Shown: in pieces, positions 45,451 to 51,912 of the stretch | How positions within the stretch are numbered: the stretch's first letter is position 1 | Layout of the letters: every line of letters begins with the position of its first letter | Sequence record: MT612989.1 | Reading direction: 5' to 3' (one strand) | Length of the DNA: 64,000 nt | Notes under the pieces: model-generated | The model's input: the letters and a program-made list of their open reading frames with translations, nothing else | What the model was told of the DNA's origin: nothing | The model's database searches: none | Made by a program: the position numbers and the translations under genes

Positions 45451-45568
45451 AGAGAGACAATATACAGCAAACAATTGAAATTACTTAAAAGAAGTGATGA
45501 TCTTAACCTGGGCTGATTTTAACCTGAGCTTGCTTAGGCGCAGCTTGAAAGGAAAGATTCTCTCTGTC
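45451..45568 (+). ncRNA. RNA I with open-form motif (less regular stem)
   Basis: AGAGAGACAATATA-CAGCAA ... ATTCTCTCTGTC. Confidence 0.5.
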
Positions 45569-45574
45569 TAGAAA

Positions 45575-45747
45575 TAGTCAGATAGGCGCGTCGCTGAAAC
45601 AGACGATATTTGCTTGTTGAGAATCAATAAGCTAGTCAACTCCGATTTATGCAAAAGACGAAAAAACACTTCGGTATTGTCTGTACTTAATTCGTCGGAA
45701 ACGACACTGTAGCCGAAAGGCAAGTTTACTAACTTAGTTGTTAGTCG
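45575..45747 (+). ncRNA. Multi-hairpin region with GNRA loops
   Basis: GCTTGTTGA/TCAATAAGC, GTCG-GAAA-CGAC, GCC-GAAA-GGC, ACTAAC/GTTAGT. Confidence 0.45.
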
Positions 45748-46596: not shown

Positions 46597-46747
46597 CGGA
46601 GTAGTGCTCCGACCGAATGACACACGCAAATGAGTCCGGTTGACAAACGTTATATGTCCCAAAGTATTGCAGGTAGCGACGGCGGTGTTGCTAGTAGATT
46701 TATCTATTTCTCCAAGACATAATGCAAGCTTTTAAAGTGTACTTTGG

Positions 46748-46825
46748 TGTGGCAGTGGGTGAAGTGGAAATACCCCCGGGTTGTGATTCCGGAAGATGCG
46801 GGTTCGATCCCCGTCTGTCACCCCA
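46748..46825 (+). tRNA. tRNA-His(GTG), U at -1
   Basis: CCGGG-TTGTGAT-TCCGG, C73-CCA. Confidence 0.9.
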
Positions 46826-46837
46826 AAGTACATTTAT

Positions 46838-46911
46838 GCTCGAATCGTATAATGGCAGTATGACGGATTGCAAATCCGCAGGTCAGGGTTCGATTCCCTG
46901 TTCGAGCTCCA
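46838..46911 (+). tRNA. tRNA-Cys(GCA)
   Basis: Loop TTGCAAA, U73-CCA. Confidence 0.9.
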
Positions 46912-46913
46912 AT

Positions 46914-46990
46914 GCGCACGTGGTCCAATTGGCAGAGGCATGAGGCTTAAAATCTCAGGGATGGCGGTTCGAATCCGCCCGTGCGTACCA
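46914..46990 (+). tRNA. tRNA-Leu(TAA), short variable loop
   Basis: TGAGG-CTTAAAA-TCTCA, CCA. Confidence 0.9.
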
Positions 46991-47003
46991 AATTCTAGCA
47001 TAA

Positions 47004-47095
47004 GCCGCGTTCTATACGAAGCTAGACTACCGCCGTTGAAAAACGGTCTCAGCCGAGCGAAAGCTGACAGGTGTTAGGGATTAAAGAGTCGCGGC
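47004..47095 (+). ncRNA. Structured inter-tRNA RNA
   Basis: GCCGCG/CGCGGC closing stem, CCGTT-GAAA-AACGG, TCAGC/GCTGA. Confidence 0.5.
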
Positions 47096-47106
47096 AGTTT
47101 ATTCAA

Positions 47107-47183
47107 GCCCAACTAGTCCAATTGGCAGAGGCACTAGTTTCAAACACTAGGAGTTCCGAGTTCGAATCTCGGGTTGGGCACCA
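47107..47183 (+). tRNA. tRNA-Leu(CAA), short variable loop
   Basis: CTAGT-TTCAAAC-ACTAG, CCA. Confidence 0.9.
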
Positions 47184-47279
47184 AATTCACTTAGCAACGC
47201 GAATCGAAAGAGAGTGGATAGACCTGCTAAGAGTCCCGCTAGGTCTTTAAATTATCTAAAGTGGATCTGCGAAGCGCGT

Positions 47280-47314
47280 GGCACACGTCAGCAATAAGAG
47301 CAAATATGTGTCTG
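47280..47314 (+). ncRNA. Minimal open-form motif J
   Basis: GGCACA-CGT-CAGCAA ... TGTGTC-TG. Confidence 0.55.
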
Positions 47315-47351
47315 AGCATGAGAGCAGCATGCCATTAATTGATGAGACGTT

Positions 47352-47440
47352 GGAAGCATGGTCTAAAGGTATGACAGCACCCTGCTAAGGTGTCGGACGT
47401 TAATAGCGTTCTCTGGGTTCGATTCCCAGTGCTTCCGCCA
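47352..47440 (+). tRNA. tRNA-Ser(GCT)
   Basis: GCACC-CTGCTAA-GGTGT, long variable arm, G-CCA. Confidence 0.92.
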
Positions 47441-47445
47441 AATTC

Positions 47446-47705
47446 GCAATAAGACATTGTACAGCAATCATTACAAAATCAAAGCAAACTTTAATAGTAA
47501 TGAGGCGCACTAGCTGCTTTCTCAGTGATGACGTGAGCCTGTCGCATTCTCATGGTAGGAAATGACCATTAAGACGGTGTTCGTACTGTCAAACGAAATA
47601 GGACTCATGCCGAATCATGAGTATTTTTCCGATGAGAAACATCGTTATAGTCAATTGAGATTTAAGGAAAGACGATAAAACATTTCTCGAATGTCTGTGT
47701 ATTGC
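47446..47705 (+). ncRNA. About 260-nt RNA H closed by the motif stem
   Basis: GCAAT-AA-GACATT-GTA-CAGCAA ... AATGTC-TG-TGT-ATTGC, several internal hairpins, then terminator. Confidence 0.65.
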
Positions 47706-47712
47706 ACATTAG

Positions 47713-47736
47713 AACCTGCCTTGAGCAGGTTTTTTT
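47713..47736 (+). terminator. Terminator ending the tRNA cluster
   Basis: AACCTGC/GCAGGTT then T tract. Confidence 0.85.
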
Positions 47737-47826
47737 GTTTATGGCGTTTGATAATTGATATAGTCTAAAGAAACAGTTAGATATGATTCTAAATACAGAT
47801 GAACTCAAATCAATTGGAGAAATGTC

Positions 47827-48033
47827 ATGAGTGATAAAACATTCGATAAGTTCATGTTAGAACTAGAAGAACAAAAGCCAGAAGATAAAAAGAAAAAGAA
47901 ACGTTCAGTAAAAGATCGTGTCAAGTCTGGTGCAAAGAAAGCTGGTAAAGCTGCGAAAACTGGTGCTAAAGTAGCCGCTGGTGCTGCTGCGGTAGGTCTT
48001 GCAACTCAAGTAACAAAGAAATCTAACGAATAA
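47827..48033 (+). CDS. Small Lys/Ala-rich late protein, possible internal protein
   Basis: MSDKTFDKFMLE start; TCTAAATA at 47788-47795; GGAG RBS. Confidence 0.6.
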   Translation: MSDKTFDKFMLELEEQKPEDKKKKKRSVKDRVKSGAKKAGKAAKTGAKVAAGAAAVGLATQVTKKSNE

Positions 48034-48260
48034 TGAAGAACATTCATCAAAAGTCTCATGCTCGTGAAGGGCGTGGTTCTGGTAATGGGCACAATGAAAA
48101 TTGGCGCAATGCACCTCTTTGGAAGAACATTGGTCCCAATGCTGAAAAGATTAAAAAGGAAGCAGAAGCCGCAGAGAAAGACGAAGAGATTGATAAACCC
48201 AATCTCGATGAGTTATCGCAGCGTGAGCGTATGCGCCGTTTACAAAGCATAGCGCATTAA
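48033..48260 (+). CDS. Hypothetical protein (75 aa)
   Basis: Coupled to previous ORF (TAATG). Confidence 0.65.
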   Translation: MKNIHQKSHAREGRGSGNGHNENWRNAPLWKNIGPNAEKIKKEAEAAEKDEEIDKPNLDELSQRERMRRLQSIAH

Positions 48261-48284
48261 TCTGAATTGGCGTAACTTCTCAGT

Positions 48285-48330
48285 GGGAGATATGTGGTCA
48301 AGGCAATAGGTTCGATTCCTGTGTCTCCCG
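48285..48330 (+). ncRNA. Mini tRNA-like element lacking anticodon arm
   Basis: GGGAGAT/GTCTCCC stem with T arm ATAGG-TTCGATT-CCTGT. Confidence 0.45.
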
Positions 48331-50437: not shown

Positions 50438-50482
50438 AAGACATTTTACAGCAATTAATTATGAGGAAATGAACAATGTCAG
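50438..50482 (+). promoter_or_regulatory. Leader hairpin with CWGCA motif enclosing RBS and AUG of Ro60-like gene
   Basis: AA-GACATT-TTA-CAGCAA..GAGG..AATGTC-AG; ATG 50476 lies in the 3' strand. Confidence 0.75.
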
Positions 50483-51912
50483 TATTTATGAACGCAATGC
50501 AAACAAACGATTCACGCACAGCAAACGGTGCAGTTACTCACAGCACTTCAGGTAACGAGTGTCTAAACTTGTTCTTCGGTATTGCTGCTATGCGTGGCAA
50601 CGATCAGTCTAAAACACTGTTCGGTCGTGCGTTTGCAGAAAACCCAGAACTAGCGACTCGCATTCTTTTGTGGTCTCGTGATGTTCGAGGTGGTGCGGGT
50701 GAACGTGGTACTTTCCGTACTCTATTCACTAAACTTTGTAATGAACAGCCTGACGTAGCTCGTGCTGTAATGTCGAAAATTCCAGAACTAGGTCGTTACG
50801 ATGACTTGATTTCTGCTTTCGGTACACGTCTTGAACAAGATGCGATCACAATGTGGTCGAACGCAATTGTCAATGACAAGAATGGTCTTGCTGCGAAGTG
50901 GTTCCCACGTGAAAACAGCAAAAACGGTCATGTGTTCAAGCGCACAATCAAGTCTCTTGGCGTAACTGCGAAGCAGTGGCGTAAGATTCTGTCGCTTCTG
51001 TCTGACACTGTTGAGCAGAAGATGTGTGCGCAAAAATGGGATGCAATCGACTTCGGTAAGTTGCCTTCTGTAGCGTCTGCTCGTTATCAACAAGCATTCG
51101 GTCGTAACGCTTCAACACGTTACACAAACTACATCGAGTCACTTCAAAAAGGTGAAGCGAAGATCAACGCTGGCGCATTGTTCCCATACGATGTCGTTAA
51201 GAGCGTTAGTCACGGTAATGCGTCTGTAGCGAACGAGCAATGGAAAGCTCTGCCAAACTACATGGAAGGTTCTGATGAACGCATCATCCCTGTTGTTGAC
51301 GTGTCTGGCTCTATGAGCACGCCAATTAACGCAGGTACAGACCGTTCAGGTGTGACTTGTAAGCAAGTTGCAATGTCTCTTGGGATTTATGTTGCTGAAC
51401 GCAATGAAGGCATCTTCAAAGATCAGTTCATTTCGTTCTCAAGCGACCCGCACTTCCACCAGTTGCGCGGCTCTTCATTGAAAGAGCGTCTTGATAACAT
51501 GAATCGTTCAGGCGAAGACATGAGTACGAACATCGGTAAGTGCTTTGATGTTCTGCTAGAGCGTGCGAAGCGTGCAAATCTTTCACAAGAAGATATGCCA
51601 ACCAAGTTGCTTATCATGAGTGACATGGAATTCGATCAAGCAAACACTGGTGGTGGTTGGTACGGTCGCGGTGAACCTGCGAACTTCGATGCAATCAAAG
51701 CCAAGTACGCACGTGCTGGTTATGAAATGCCACAACTGGTCTTCTGGAACATTCGTGGTCGTCTTGGCAACGTTCCGGTTAAAGCTGGTGAAGCGGGTAC
51801 TGCACTGGTATCTGGTTGTAGCCCATCTATCTTGACTTCACTGTTGGGTGGTGAGCTTGAGCCAATCAAGATCATGATGAAAACTGTAGGCGTCGAACGC
51901 TACAGCTTTTAA
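50476..51912 (+). CDS. Ro60-like TROVE plus vWA protein (DUF2828-type)
   Basis: TANGA, RDVRGGAGER, PELGRYDDL, LAAKWFPRE; MIDAS VVDVSGSM; SDMEFD; VFWNI. Confidence 0.85.
   Translation: MSVFMNAMQTNDSRTANGAVTHSTSGNECLNLFFGIAAMRGNDQSKTLFGRAFAENPELATRILLWSRDVRGGAGERGTFRTLFTKLCNEQPDVARAVMSKIPELGRYDDLISAFGTRLEQDAITMWSNAIVNDKNGLAAKWFPRENSKNGHVFKRTIKSLGVTAKQWRKILSLLSDTVEQKMCAQKWDAIDFGKLPSVASARYQQAFGRNASTRYTNYIESLQKGEAKINAGALFPYDVVKSVSHGNASVANEQWKALPNYMEGSDERIIPVVDVSGSMSTPINAGTDRSGVTCKQVAMSLGIYVAERNEGIFKDQFISFSSDPHFHQLRGSSLKERLDNMNRSGEDMSTNIGKCFDVLLERAKRANLSQEDMPTKLLIMSDMEFDQANTGGGWYGRGEPANFDAIKAKYARAGYEMPQLVFWNIRGRLGNVPVKAGEAGTALVSGCSPSILTSLLGGELEPIKIMMKTVGVERYSF

What the first reader, a model, noticed from the sequence alone, without database searches (positions are those of the whole stretch)
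47446..47705. About 260-nt RNA H clamped by the motif stem at the end of the tRNA operon
Seen: GACATT (47453) pairs with AATGTC (47690) about 240 nt away, with an outer GCAAT/ATTGC helix. Internal hairpins include ACTCATG/CATGAGT, ATGGT/ACCAT and TTCGT/ACGAA. No ORF of 60 aa or more; terminator follows. Inference: a large scaffold RNA delivered to the Ro protein.
Basis: partly seen in the sequence, partly recalled or inferred. Interest (0 to 1): 0.65.

Follow-up and report, generated by a model that had tools for sequence, protein, structure and literature searches.

The report
Large, possibly circular, phage Y-like RNA
The stretch after the last tRNA gene of this KVP40-like Vibrio phage encodes a real, conserved 268-base folded RNA that carries the short clamp motif found beside phage Ro60-like genes, and in one seawater RNA data set its two ends are joined head to tail, so it may be a circular RNA.

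Summary
The window is a KVP40-like Vibrio phage. GACATT (47453) pairs with AATGTC (47690), inside an outer GCAAT/ATTGC helix, and a terminator follows. A 7-bp partner within 330 nt arises by chance for about 15% of planted motifs, so the case rests on comparison. In 18 distinct homologues, all from KVP40-like vibriophages, 90.6% of cells pair (30-43% when partners are slid). Sixteen pairs change on both sides, against 6.6 in shuffles. No ORF is conserved and no Rfam family matches.

New here:
- RNA-seq contigs from one seawater sample (four runs) cover exactly 47442-47707/47709 and close on themselves, joining 47709 to 47442. They never reach the tRNA or the terminator. RNA H is therefore a discrete RNA whose ends are joined head to tail, probably a circle. 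A reverse-transcription artefact or a tandem DNA copy is not excluded.
- A paralogue lies at about 45453-45683.

The clamp (AG-helix plus UACAGCAA) matches 17 of 18 bases in the leader of the Ro60-like gene (DUF2828+DUF7788) 2.8 kb downstream. Similar units flank that gene in three of five unrelated phages I sampled. The scan had already noted this motif family on other DNA. Binding to the Ro-like protein is inferred, not shown.

The parts
47352..47440 (+). tRNA-Ser(GCU), last tRNA of the operon. Its CCA end lies 1 nt before the RNA H 5' end.
   Evidence: ARAGORN; Rfam tRNA 55.5 bits
47442..47709 (+). RNA H as seen in RNA contigs (268 nt here; 265/267 nt in the 95%-identical relative that was sequenced). 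Ends are joined 47709 (or 47707) to 47442.
   Evidence: tables 5 and 8: contigs of 295-297 nt equal the circle plus 30 (k-1); none extends into the flanks
47446..47450 (+). P1a 5' strand GCAAU. It pairs with 47701-47705 AUUGC. The 4-nt tails AUUC (47442-45) and ACAU (47706-09) would form an 8-nt loop after joining.
   Evidence: Replaced by GUAAAU/AUUUAC in phage 1.081.O and by UGCA/UGCA in D482.
47452..47458 (+). P1b 5' strand AGACAUU (the 'motif stem'). It pairs with 47690-47696 AAUGUCU.
   Evidence: helix 2: 100% of cells paired. Two pairs change on both sides in F86 (GGCAAU/AUUGCC).
47459..47467 (+). Unpaired conserved motif G-UACAGCAA directly after the 5' strand of the clamp.
   Evidence: invariant or nearly so in all 18 homologues; same module in the Ro-like gene leader and in other phages
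47468..47503 (+). P2 hairpin UCAUUAC / GUAAUGA with an A-rich loop. nt-1 and CZ01 carry an extra inserted hairpin here whose stem covaries (U-A to C-G).
   Evidence: helices 3-4
47504..47539 (+). P3 GGCGCA/UGAGCC enclosing the small hairpin P3b, GCUG 47513-16 / CAGU 47523-26, with conserved loop CUUUCU.
   Evidence: helices 5-6: C-G to U-A (nt-1, CZ01) and to A-U (1.081.O). P3b is GCCG/CGGU in D482.
47552..47569 (+). P4 hairpin AUGGU / ACCAU with conserved loop AGGAAAUG.
   Evidence: GAAGU/ACUUC in nt-1, GAGU/ACUC in 1.081.O.
47573..47590 (+). P5 hairpin GACGGUG-UUCG-UACUGUC.
   Evidence: helix 8: G-C to A-U in 3 sequences. D482 has an unrelated 7-bp hairpin at this place.
47603..47622 (+). 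P6 hairpin ACUCAUG / CAUGAGU, loop CCGAAU.
   Evidence: helix 9: 4 pairs change on both sides. UUGCG/CGCAA in nt-1, UUCAUGU/ACAUGAA in D482.
47628..47646 (+). P7 hairpin CGAUG-AGAAA-CAUCG. It is 5 bp here and 7 bp in the KVP40 group and in the RNA-seq variant.
   Evidence: helix 10. table 3: changes at 47628/29 and 47645/46 together create two new pairs.
47656..47689 (+). P8 UGAGA / UCUCG, stacked on the clamp, with a 24-nt loop (47661-47684) conserved even in the paralogue.
   Evidence: The second pair is A-U, U-A (D482), C-G (F86, paralogue).
47711..47740 (+). Intrinsic terminator ending the tRNA/ncRNA transcript. It is not part of the mature RNA.
   Evidence: conserved position in all lineages where RNA H is last; absent from RNA contigs
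50438..50482 (+). Copy of the clamp in the leader of the Ro60-like gene (AAGACAUU-U-UACAGCAAU ... AAUGUC, which contains the AUG). It matches the RNA H 5' end in 17 of 18 bases.
   Evidence: kept in KVP40 and nt-1
50476..51912 (+). Ro60-like protein gene (478 aa), the proposed protein partner.
   Evidence: Pfam DUF2828 + DUF7788; TROVE/vWA_Ro60 look-alikes; weak Ro60/TROVE profile hits; 711 phage records, some annotated 'Ro-like RNA binding protein'
45453..45683 (+). Paralogue of RNA H with clamp AGACAAUA/UAUUGUCU + UACAGCAA, a P7-like hairpin, and P8 with the same conserved loop.

Best explanation
RNA H is a non-coding RNA gene of KVP40-like vibriophages.

Shown:
- It is transcribed with the tRNA operon.
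- It exists as a discrete species of about 268 nt (47442-47709).
- A two-part closing helix (P1a, P1b) brings its ends together.
- P1b plus the adjoining UACAGCAA is the clamp module that recurs beside phage Ro60-like (DUF2828) genes.
- The 230-nt interior is a conserved array of seven hairpins with conserved loops.

Inferred:
- The ends are made by endonuclease cuts in the AU-rich tails 4 nt outside P1a. The 5' site, CAA|AUU, fits the RNase E preference.
- Such cuts leave 5'-phosphate and 3'-OH ends held side by side like a broken hairpin loop. A phage ATP-dependent RNA ligase (Rnl1 type more likely than Rnl2 type) seals them into a circle.
- The circle, or the linear form, is bound through the clamp by the Ro60-like protein and acts like a Y RNA. 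A stable RNA would couple that protein to whatever the large cargo domain binds. It may also compete with the clamp copy in the protein's own mRNA leader.
For: Identity and range. The window is 100% identical over 601 nt to Vibrio phages R10Z, R11Z and Va3. Homologues occur in 50 phage records, all Vibrio phages of the KVP40 kind.

Structure. On the 18-sequence alignment, 90.6% of cells pair, against 30-43% when partners are slid. Sixteen pairs change on both sides, against 6.6 +/- 1.7 in shuffles (0 of 500 reach it). Every lineage's own minimum-energy fold closes with P1a and P1b.

Non-coding. Indels of 1 nt fall inside conserved blocks and no ORF is shared.

Discrete and joined.
- Contigs from four RNA runs of one sample span 47442-47707/09 and run on into 47442-47470.
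- A joint 47709 to 47442 is reported with side lengths 126 and 33.
- Contig length equals the circle plus 30.
- No contig links RNA H to its flanks.
- The variant's four changes in P7 create two new pairs, so it is a functional-looking relative.

No DNA copy of the joint. IMG/VR has none, and each of the 50 phage genomes holds a single copy.

Ligases. Rnl1-type (PF09511) and Rnl2-type (PF09414) genes are present in all five lineages tested.

Ro link.
- The gene lies 2.8 kb downstream on the same strand and looks Ro60-like.
- A published HHpred match to Rsr exists for the P100-type homologue (PMC12282133).
- The leader copy of the clamp is present.
- Clamp units adjoin the gene in Cronobacter S13, E. 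coli fjerdesal and Campylobacter F375.
Against: - The head-to-tail form rests on assembled contigs of low depth (3-7) from a single sample and study, made with oligo-dT priming.
- Reverse transcriptase can jump from the 5' end to a neighbouring 3' end. There is an AU microhomology at the joint, and the two joint forms differ by exactly that AU.
- A tandem DNA duplication in the uncultured relative cannot be excluded without its DNA.
- Both ligase types are common to T4-like phages, so their presence is not specific.
- No binding data exist for the Ro-like protein.
- RNA H lacks the GNCGAA motif and the tRNA-like domain of described bacterial Y RNAs, and it scores on no Rfam Y RNA model.
- Two of the five unrelated phages sampled showed no clamp unit under my strict pattern.
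- The thermodynamic z-score is modest.
Confidence: 0.5

Rival explanations
1. RNA H is a linear stable RNA with ends at 47442 and 47707-09. The head-to-tail joints are artefacts: reverse transcriptase switched from the 5' end to the adjacent 3' end held by P1a, or the uncultured relative has a tandem DNA duplication. Everything else, including structure and clamp, stands.
For: There is an AU microhomology at the joint, and the two joint forms differ by that AU. Depth is only 3-7, from one sample. The closing helix places the ends side by side, which favours template switching. T4's analogous rnaC and rnaD are annotated as linear stable RNAs.
Against: The joint was assembled in all four runs although the mean depth is low, so joint reads cannot be rare relative to internal reads. 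No contig continues into either flank. No DNA with the joint is in IMG/VR, and there is no second copy in 50 genomes.
Confidence: 0.3
2. RNA H has nothing to do with the Ro60-like protein. It is an independent stable phage RNA, like T4 species 1 and 2 RNAs, with another job, such as a decoy or sponge for a host nuclease, defence protein or RNA. The shared clamp reflects a common processing or ligation signal rather than a protein-binding site.
For: It has the same position as T4 rnaD and rnaC at the 3' end of the tRNA operon. The clamp flanks the processing sites. The cargo loops (P4, P8) are conserved independently of the clamp. There are no binding data.
Against: The clamp also sits in the leader of the Ro-like gene over its start codon, where no stable RNA is excised. 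It also sits beside this gene in unrelated phages. I recall no DUF2828 gene in T4, which also shows no clamp in rnaC or rnaD.
Confidence: 0.15
3. The stretch is only a structured 3' trailer that protects or helps process the tRNA operon transcript and has no function as a free RNA.
For: It lies between the last tRNA and the terminator. Structured trailers stabilise transcripts.
Against: The sequence is conserved in loops, not only in stems. A paralogue and the F86 copy lie between tRNAs rather than at the operon end. The RNA accumulates without the tRNA and without the terminator.
Confidence: 0.04
4. It encodes a small protein (the 38-aa ORF 47562-47678).
For: An ATG ORF of 38 aa exists in the window and the KVP40 group. 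One record (QD01) annotates a CDS here.
Against: The ORF is lost or changes length in VS1, nt-1, CZ01, 1.081.O and D482 through indels. There is no Pfam hit. Substitutions follow base pairing.
Confidence: 0.01

Closest known systems
Bacterial and phage Y RNAs (YrlA, Yrn1), partners of Ro60/Rsr (Chen et al. 2014, PMC4201824)
   Same: It is a non-coding RNA encoded within 4 kb of a Ro60-like gene on the same strand. The 5' and 3' ends pair in a closing stem that carries a conserved module, and a variable cargo domain lies inside. Several copies per genome sit among tRNA genes.
   Different: The protein is of the DUF2828+DUF7788 type, not a Pfam TROVE match. The conserved module is AG-helix + UACAGCAA, not GNCGAA. 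RNA H has no tRNA-like domain. At 268 nt it is much larger. It matches no Rfam Y RNA model. It may be circular.
Class I RNAs of dictyostelid amoebae (Kjellin et al. 2021, PMC7919456)
   Same: A short stem joins the 5' and 3' ends. It is followed on the 5' side by an unpaired motif ending ACAGCAA. Four of the five near-invariant positions of the 11-nt motif are matched (C6, C9, A10, A11). The interior is variable.
   Different: Class I RNAs are 42-65 nt long, eukaryotic and transcribed from their own DUSE promoter, and they bind an RRM protein. RNA H is four to six times longer and is cut from a phage tRNA operon. The kinship is untested and may be convergence.
Phage T4 stable RNAs rnaC (species 1) and rnaD (species 2)
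   Same: They are small stable RNAs of unknown function that follow the last tRNA of a T4-like phage tRNA operon, separated from the CCA end by a few A/U-rich bases.
   Different: There is no sequence similarity and no clamp motif. They are 119-139 nt. rnaC has a tRNA-like T arm. They are described as linear.
Enzyme-made circular RNAs (archaeal tRNA and rRNA introns, circular C/D RNAs; group I intron circles of T4)
   Same: It is encoded in DNA, excised from a longer transcript, and has ends brought together by a helix before joining.
   Different: There is no bulge-helix-bulge motif, no intron context and no ribozyme match. The proposed ligase is a phage Rnl acting on 5'-phosphate and 3'-OH ends. 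Circularity itself is not yet proven.

Membership tests
Bacterial/phage Y RNA (YrlA/Yrn1 type) | Encoded within about 4 kb of a Ro60 orthologue, on the same strand | tested here: met
   RNA H ends 2.8 kb upstream of the 478-aa gene, on the same strand. The Ro60 likeness of that protein is supported but indirect.
Bacterial/phage Y RNA (YrlA/Yrn1 type) | Closing stem formed by the 5' and 3' ends | tested here: met
   P1a and P1b; 91% and 100% of cells pair, with compensatory changes
Bacterial/phage Y RNA (YrlA/Yrn1 type) | Ro-binding motif GNCGAAN0-1G near the 5' end (PMC4201824) | tested here: not met
   Read directly: no such motif lies in or next to the closing stem. The conserved element is UACAGCAA.
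Bacterial/phage Y RNA (YrlA/Yrn1 type) | tRNA-like domain | tested here: not met
   There is no tRNA or T-arm match inside 47442-47709 by ARAGORN or Rfam. Clamp RNAs of S13 and fjerdesal do have T-arm-like cargo.
Bacterial/phage Y RNA (YrlA/Yrn1 type) | Match to Rfam Y RNA models | tested here: not met
   the only hit (Deinococcus_Y_RNA, 17 bits against a gathering score of 80) lies on tRNA-Leu, not on RNA H
Bacterial/phage Y RNA (YrlA/Yrn1 type) | Physical binding to the Ro60 protein | not testable with these tools
   needs pull-down, CLIP or EMSA
Phage clamp-motif RNAs beside DUF2828/Ro60-like genes (family noted earlier by this scan, apparently undescribed in print) | Helix beginning AG and ending CU, followed after 0-1 nt by U(A/U)CAGCAA on the 5' side | tested here: met
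   AGACAUU-G-UACAGCAA ... AAUGUCU. Five such units occur on the + strand, all within 44.2-50.5 kb, against 1.8 expected for 12 planted motifs in shuffles.
Phage clamp-motif RNAs beside DUF2828/Ro60-like genes (family noted earlier by this scan, apparently undescribed in print) | Lies in or next to a tRNA cluster near a DUF2828 gene, on the same strand | tested here: met
   The same arrangement holds in S13, fjerdesal and F375.
Dictyostelid Class I RNA | Length 42-65 nt, own DUSE promoter | tested here: not met
   268 nt, cut from a tRNA operon
Dictyostelid Class I RNA | Terminal stem plus an 11-nt motif with T3, C6, C9, A10, A11 | tested here: inconclusive
   The stem is present. The motif UUGUACAGCAA matches C6, C9, A10 and A11 but has G at position 3.
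Covalently closed circular RNA | Reads or contigs joining the 3' end to the 5' end | tested here: met
   joint 47709 to 47442 (X3, X4) and 47707 to 47442 (X1, X2); one sample only
Covalently closed circular RNA | Exonuclease (RNase R) resistance, gel behaviour, absence of a DNA template for the joint in the same sample | not testable with these tools
   Only indirect evidence: no joint in IMG/VR DNA and a single copy in 50 genomes.
Ribozyme-processed viroid-like circles | Self-cleaving ribozyme (hammerhead, hairpin, twister, HDV ...) | tested here: not met
   no ribozyme family up to E = 10

The most novel reading that the evidence does not exclude
RNA H is a covalently closed circular RNA made by a DNA phage. 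It would be cut out of the tRNA operon transcript and sealed by the phage's own RNA ligase across a clamp helix, then serve as a nuclease-proof partner of the phage Ro60-like protein. If the whole clamp-motif family is circularised in the same way, that would explain why the scan sees the same RNAs encoded in different circular permutations in different phages. It would also give T4-type RNA ligases a constructive job beyond tRNA repair.
Probability: 0.4. Interest if true: 0.88.

Novelty: new variant of a known kind. Interest (0 to 1): 0.7.

Why it matters
Large lytic phages carry many unexplained sequences in their tRNA clusters, and their Ro60-like genes (711 phage records) have no known RNA partners. 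RNA H is the largest and best-defined candidate partner. It has a mapped fold, mapped ends, a paralogue and direct RNA evidence, all in phages that can be grown in the laboratory (KVP40, nt-1, phi-pp2).

If the head-to-tail joint reflects a true circle, this would be, as far as I could find, the first non-intron circular RNA made by a bacteriophage. It would also be a natural substrate for phage RNA ligases, whose only accepted role is repair of cut tRNA. Either way it gives a concrete handle on what phage Ro60-like proteins do during infection.

Tried and rejected
- Rfam, at gathering and at E <= 10: no family for RNA H, no ribozyme, no Y RNA.
- Wider relatives: pattern scans for the conserved P8 loop in IMG/VR and in JGI metagenomes, and for the 5' clamp in IMG/VR, returned only KVP40 and VH7D plus chance matches inside coding genes. 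The family looks confined to KVP40-like vibriophages.
- Long-range pairings suggested by single-sequence folding are not kept in D482, F86 or nt-1, so I dropped them. They were UCUCAGU with AUUGAGA, CUUUC with GAAAG, and AUAGG with CCUGU.
- A local hairpin ACAUU/AAUGU that would compete with the clamp is broken in KVP40 and nt-1.
- RNAalifold on the plain MAFFT alignment gave a partly wrong fold, because nt-1 hairpins are out of register. I used hand-checked helices instead.
- T4 rnaC and rnaD: same position, no similarity, no clamp.
- Small-protein reading rejected.
- A covariance model of the whole RNA was not built: 268 positions exceed the calibration limit.
- The window's own assembly is not held, so ligase genes were sought in identical or near relatives. 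They are not in the window.
- Literature searches found no paper on DUF2828 function or on circular RNAs from phage tRNA operons.

Full report
**What the window is.** The 601 bases around the finding are 100% identical to Vibrio phages vB_ValM_R10Z, R11Z and Va3, and about 91-92% identical to KVP40. The region 39-47.5 kb is the phage's tRNA operon, with 28 tRNA genes by ARAGORN and 31 Rfam tRNA matches. The finding lies between the last tRNA, tRNA-Ser(GCU) 47352-47440, and an intrinsic terminator at 47711-47733 followed by a T-run. No sigma-70-like promoter precedes it on the + strand, so it is most simply co-transcribed with the tRNAs.

**The observation.**
- The motif stem is 7 bp (47452-58 with 47690-96) and the outer helix 5 bp (47446-50 with 47701-05).
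- Single-sequence folding closes the molecule with exactly these helices.
- Energy alone is not convincing: z = -1.6 for 47442-47709.
- My shuffle test shows that a 7-bp partner within 330 nt appears by chance for about 15% of planted motifs. The case has to be made by comparison.

**Comparison.** blastn finds the stretch in 50 phage records, all KVP40-like vibriophages. I collected 18 distinct versions. They come from the window/phi-ST2 group, the KVP40 group, VS1/VS2/QD01, nt-1/CZ01, and three short or divergent forms: 1.081.O (172 nt), D482 (214 nt) and F86 (232 nt).

On a plain MAFFT alignment, which disfavours the structure where hairpins are out of register, my ten helices give these figures:
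- 90.6% of cells pair, against 30-43% when partners are slid by 1-3 columns.
- 16 pairs change on both sides, against 6.6 +/- 1.7 in shuffles (0 of 500 reach it).
- The covariation score is 0.135, against 0.081 in shuffles.

Examples read directly:
- The clamp becomes GGCAAU/AUUGCC in F86.
- The outer helix becomes GUAAAU/AUUUAC in 1.081.O and UGCA/UGCA in D482.
- P6 is ACUCAUG/CAUGAGU here, UUGCG/CGCAA in nt-1 and UUCAUGU/ACAUGAA in D482.
- P7 is CGAUG/CAUCG here, GCUUGU/ACAAGC in nt-1 and UCUUGU/ACAAGA in F86.
- P8 is UGAGA/UCUCG here, UGUGA/UCACG in D482, GCGA/UCGC in F86 and CCGA/UCGG in the paralogue.

Each lineage's own minimum-energy fold closes with P1a and P1b. Loops are conserved as sequence: UACAGCAA, CUUUCU, AGGAAAUG and the 24-nt P8 loop. 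One-base indels fall in conserved blocks and no ORF is shared. Rfam has no match, including ribozymes and Y RNAs. This is a structured non-coding RNA gene. The third (TTCGT/ACGAA) competes with a UUCG-capped hairpin that has the compensatory changes.

**Expression and ends.** One search for public runs gave four RNA-seq runs (oligo-dT, seawater, one sample, one study) that hold part of the stretch. I laid them on 46700-48300.
- In all four runs the only contig on RNA H spans 47442 to 47707 or 47709 and then continues with 47442-47470.
- The tool reports a joint that 'goes back 268', from 47709 to 47442, with 126 and 33 letters on the shorter side.
- Contig lengths of 297 and 295 equal a 267- or 265-nt cycle plus 30, which is what a k = 31 assembler gives for a closed cycle.
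- No contig links RNA H to tRNA-Ser or to the terminator, and depth is zero over both.
- The sequenced relative is about 95% identical. Four of its changes (47628, 47629, 47645, 47646) together add two Watson-Crick pairs to P7.

RNA H therefore exists as a discrete RNA whose ends lie 4 nt outside P1a on each side, and reads join those ends head to tail. The two joint forms differ by one AU.

**How to read the joint.** A covalently closed circle is the simplest reading, for three reasons. The joint was assembled in every run despite a depth of only 3-7. The flanks are absent. No DNA with the joint exists in IMG/VR, and no genome has two copies.

Two alternatives remain. Reverse transcriptase may have jumped between ends that P1a holds together, helped by the AU microhomology. 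Or the uncultured relative may carry a tandem DNA duplication. These data cannot separate the three readings, so I put the circle at roughly 0.4-0.55.

**Mechanism (inferred).**
- The 5' end, CCA-A|AUUC, fits the RNase E preference for cutting before AUU a few bases past a tRNA's CCA. This rests on my knowledge of E. coli and Salmonella work, not on a test here. AUU at this place is kept in 1.081.O and D482.
- Such cuts leave 5'-phosphate and 3'-OH ends, the substrate of ATP-dependent RNA ligases.
- After P1a forms, the two 4-nt tails look like a hairpin loop broken once, which resembles the broken anticodon loop that T4 Rnl1 seals.
- All five RNA-H-bearing lineages tested encode an Rnl1-type and an Rnl2-type ligase. 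No RtcB was found in VH7D. This is permissive, not specific, because T4-like phages generally have both.

**The Ro link.**
- The 478-aa gene at 50476-51912 is Pfam DUF2828 + DUF7788.
- With those families excluded, 26 of its 30 nearest language-model clusters are TROVE + vWA_Ro60.
- A six-sequence profile puts Xenopus Ro60 and two TROVE proteins on top of the PDB list, but at a non-significant E of about 0.2.
- Homologues occur in 711 phage records, some annotated 'Ro-like RNA binding protein'.
- A paper on a P100-like Listeria phage reports an HHpred match to Rsr and abundant unexplained RNAs nearby (PMC12282133).
- The gene's leader holds AAGACAUU-U-UACAGCAAU ... AAUGUC, which shares 17 of 18 bases with RNA H's 5' end. 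The 3' strand covers the AUG. KVP40 and nt-1 keep this.

In five unrelated phages the gene always sits beside tRNA genes. In three of them (Cronobacter S13, E. coli fjerdesal, Campylobacter F375) I find AG-helix + U(A/U)CAGCAA units within 1 kb on the same strand. Some carry T-arm-like cargo, and one lies over the gene's ribosome-binding site.

This agrees with earlier notes of this scan, which I partly re-tested. It makes the clamp a plausible binding site for the protein, but nothing here shows binding. RNA H differs from described Y RNAs in the binding motif, in lacking a tRNA-like domain, in size and perhaps in topology (PMC4201824). The clamp also resembles the stem plus 11-nt motif of dictyostelid Class I RNAs (PMC7919456). 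I treat that as a resemblance only.

**Paralogue.** The window has a second long clamp RNA at about 45453-45683. It has a different clamp sequence and a compensated P8, but the same P8 loop. F86's copy is closer to this paralogue. The conserved P8 loop is therefore the signature of a small family of long clamp RNAs in this phage group, and it is the best candidate for the site that contacts whatever the cargo recognises.

**Verdict.**
- RNA H is a new, clade-restricted, large member of an apparently undescribed family of phage RNAs associated with Ro60-like genes, and functionally nearest to Y RNAs.
- The new and potentially important point is the head-to-tail joined form, which needs a bench test.

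Noticed in passing
window 45453-45683 (+): A paralogue of RNA H lies between tRNA-Arg and tRNA-Met. It has clamp AGACAAUA/UAUUGUCU + UACAGCAA and the same conserved P8 loop, and spans about 230 nt. Phage F86's copy (L008 1033-1264) is its closer relative.
   Followed up: partly
L029 6152-6290; L030 5755-6525; L033 3895-3975: Clamp units (AG-helix + U[A/U]CAGCAA ... helix-CU) lie on the same strand within 1 kb of the DUF2828/Ro60-like gene in Cronobacter phage S13, E. coli phage fjerdesal (four units) and Campylobacter phage F375 (over the gene's RBS). The S13 and fjerdesal units carry T-arm-like cargo. In fjerdesal the order is T-arm, acceptor-like hairpin, D-arm.
   Followed up: partly
L031 4001-5521 and 6780-8063 (Listeria phage P100): The Ro-like gene gp165 lies 1.3 kb upstream of a gene annotated 'tRNA splicing ligase' (gp160). 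This echoes the rsr-rtcB linkage of bacterial RNA repair operons.
   Followed up: no
window 46991-47106 and 47184-47351 (+): Two further non-tRNA spacers begin, like RNA H, with AAUUC right after a tRNA's CCA. An RNA contig of run X1 covers 46995-47176 (spacer plus tRNA-Leu). They lack the full clamp motif.
   Followed up: no
L002 3089-3268 and 3682-4086 (KVP40): Relative to the window, KVP40 and its close kin have extra small ORFs inserted before tRNA-Ser and after the RNA H terminator. phi-ST2, VH7D and ValKK3 have a different gene on the opposite strand after the terminator. RNA H plus its terminator is the conserved unit.
   Followed up: partly
L034 1909-2172 (-) (phage T4): In T4, rnaD and rnaC follow tRNA-Arg with the same CCA-AAU spacing as the KVP40-type spacers. 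rnaC holds a tRNA-like T arm. Neither has the clamp motif.
   Followed up: partly
L038 (phage D482), upstream of its Ro-like gene: The motif UUACAGCAAUG runs straight into the start codon without the GACAUU/AAUGUC stem seen in the window, KVP40 and nt-1. The leader copy is therefore not uniform across the clade.
   Followed up: no
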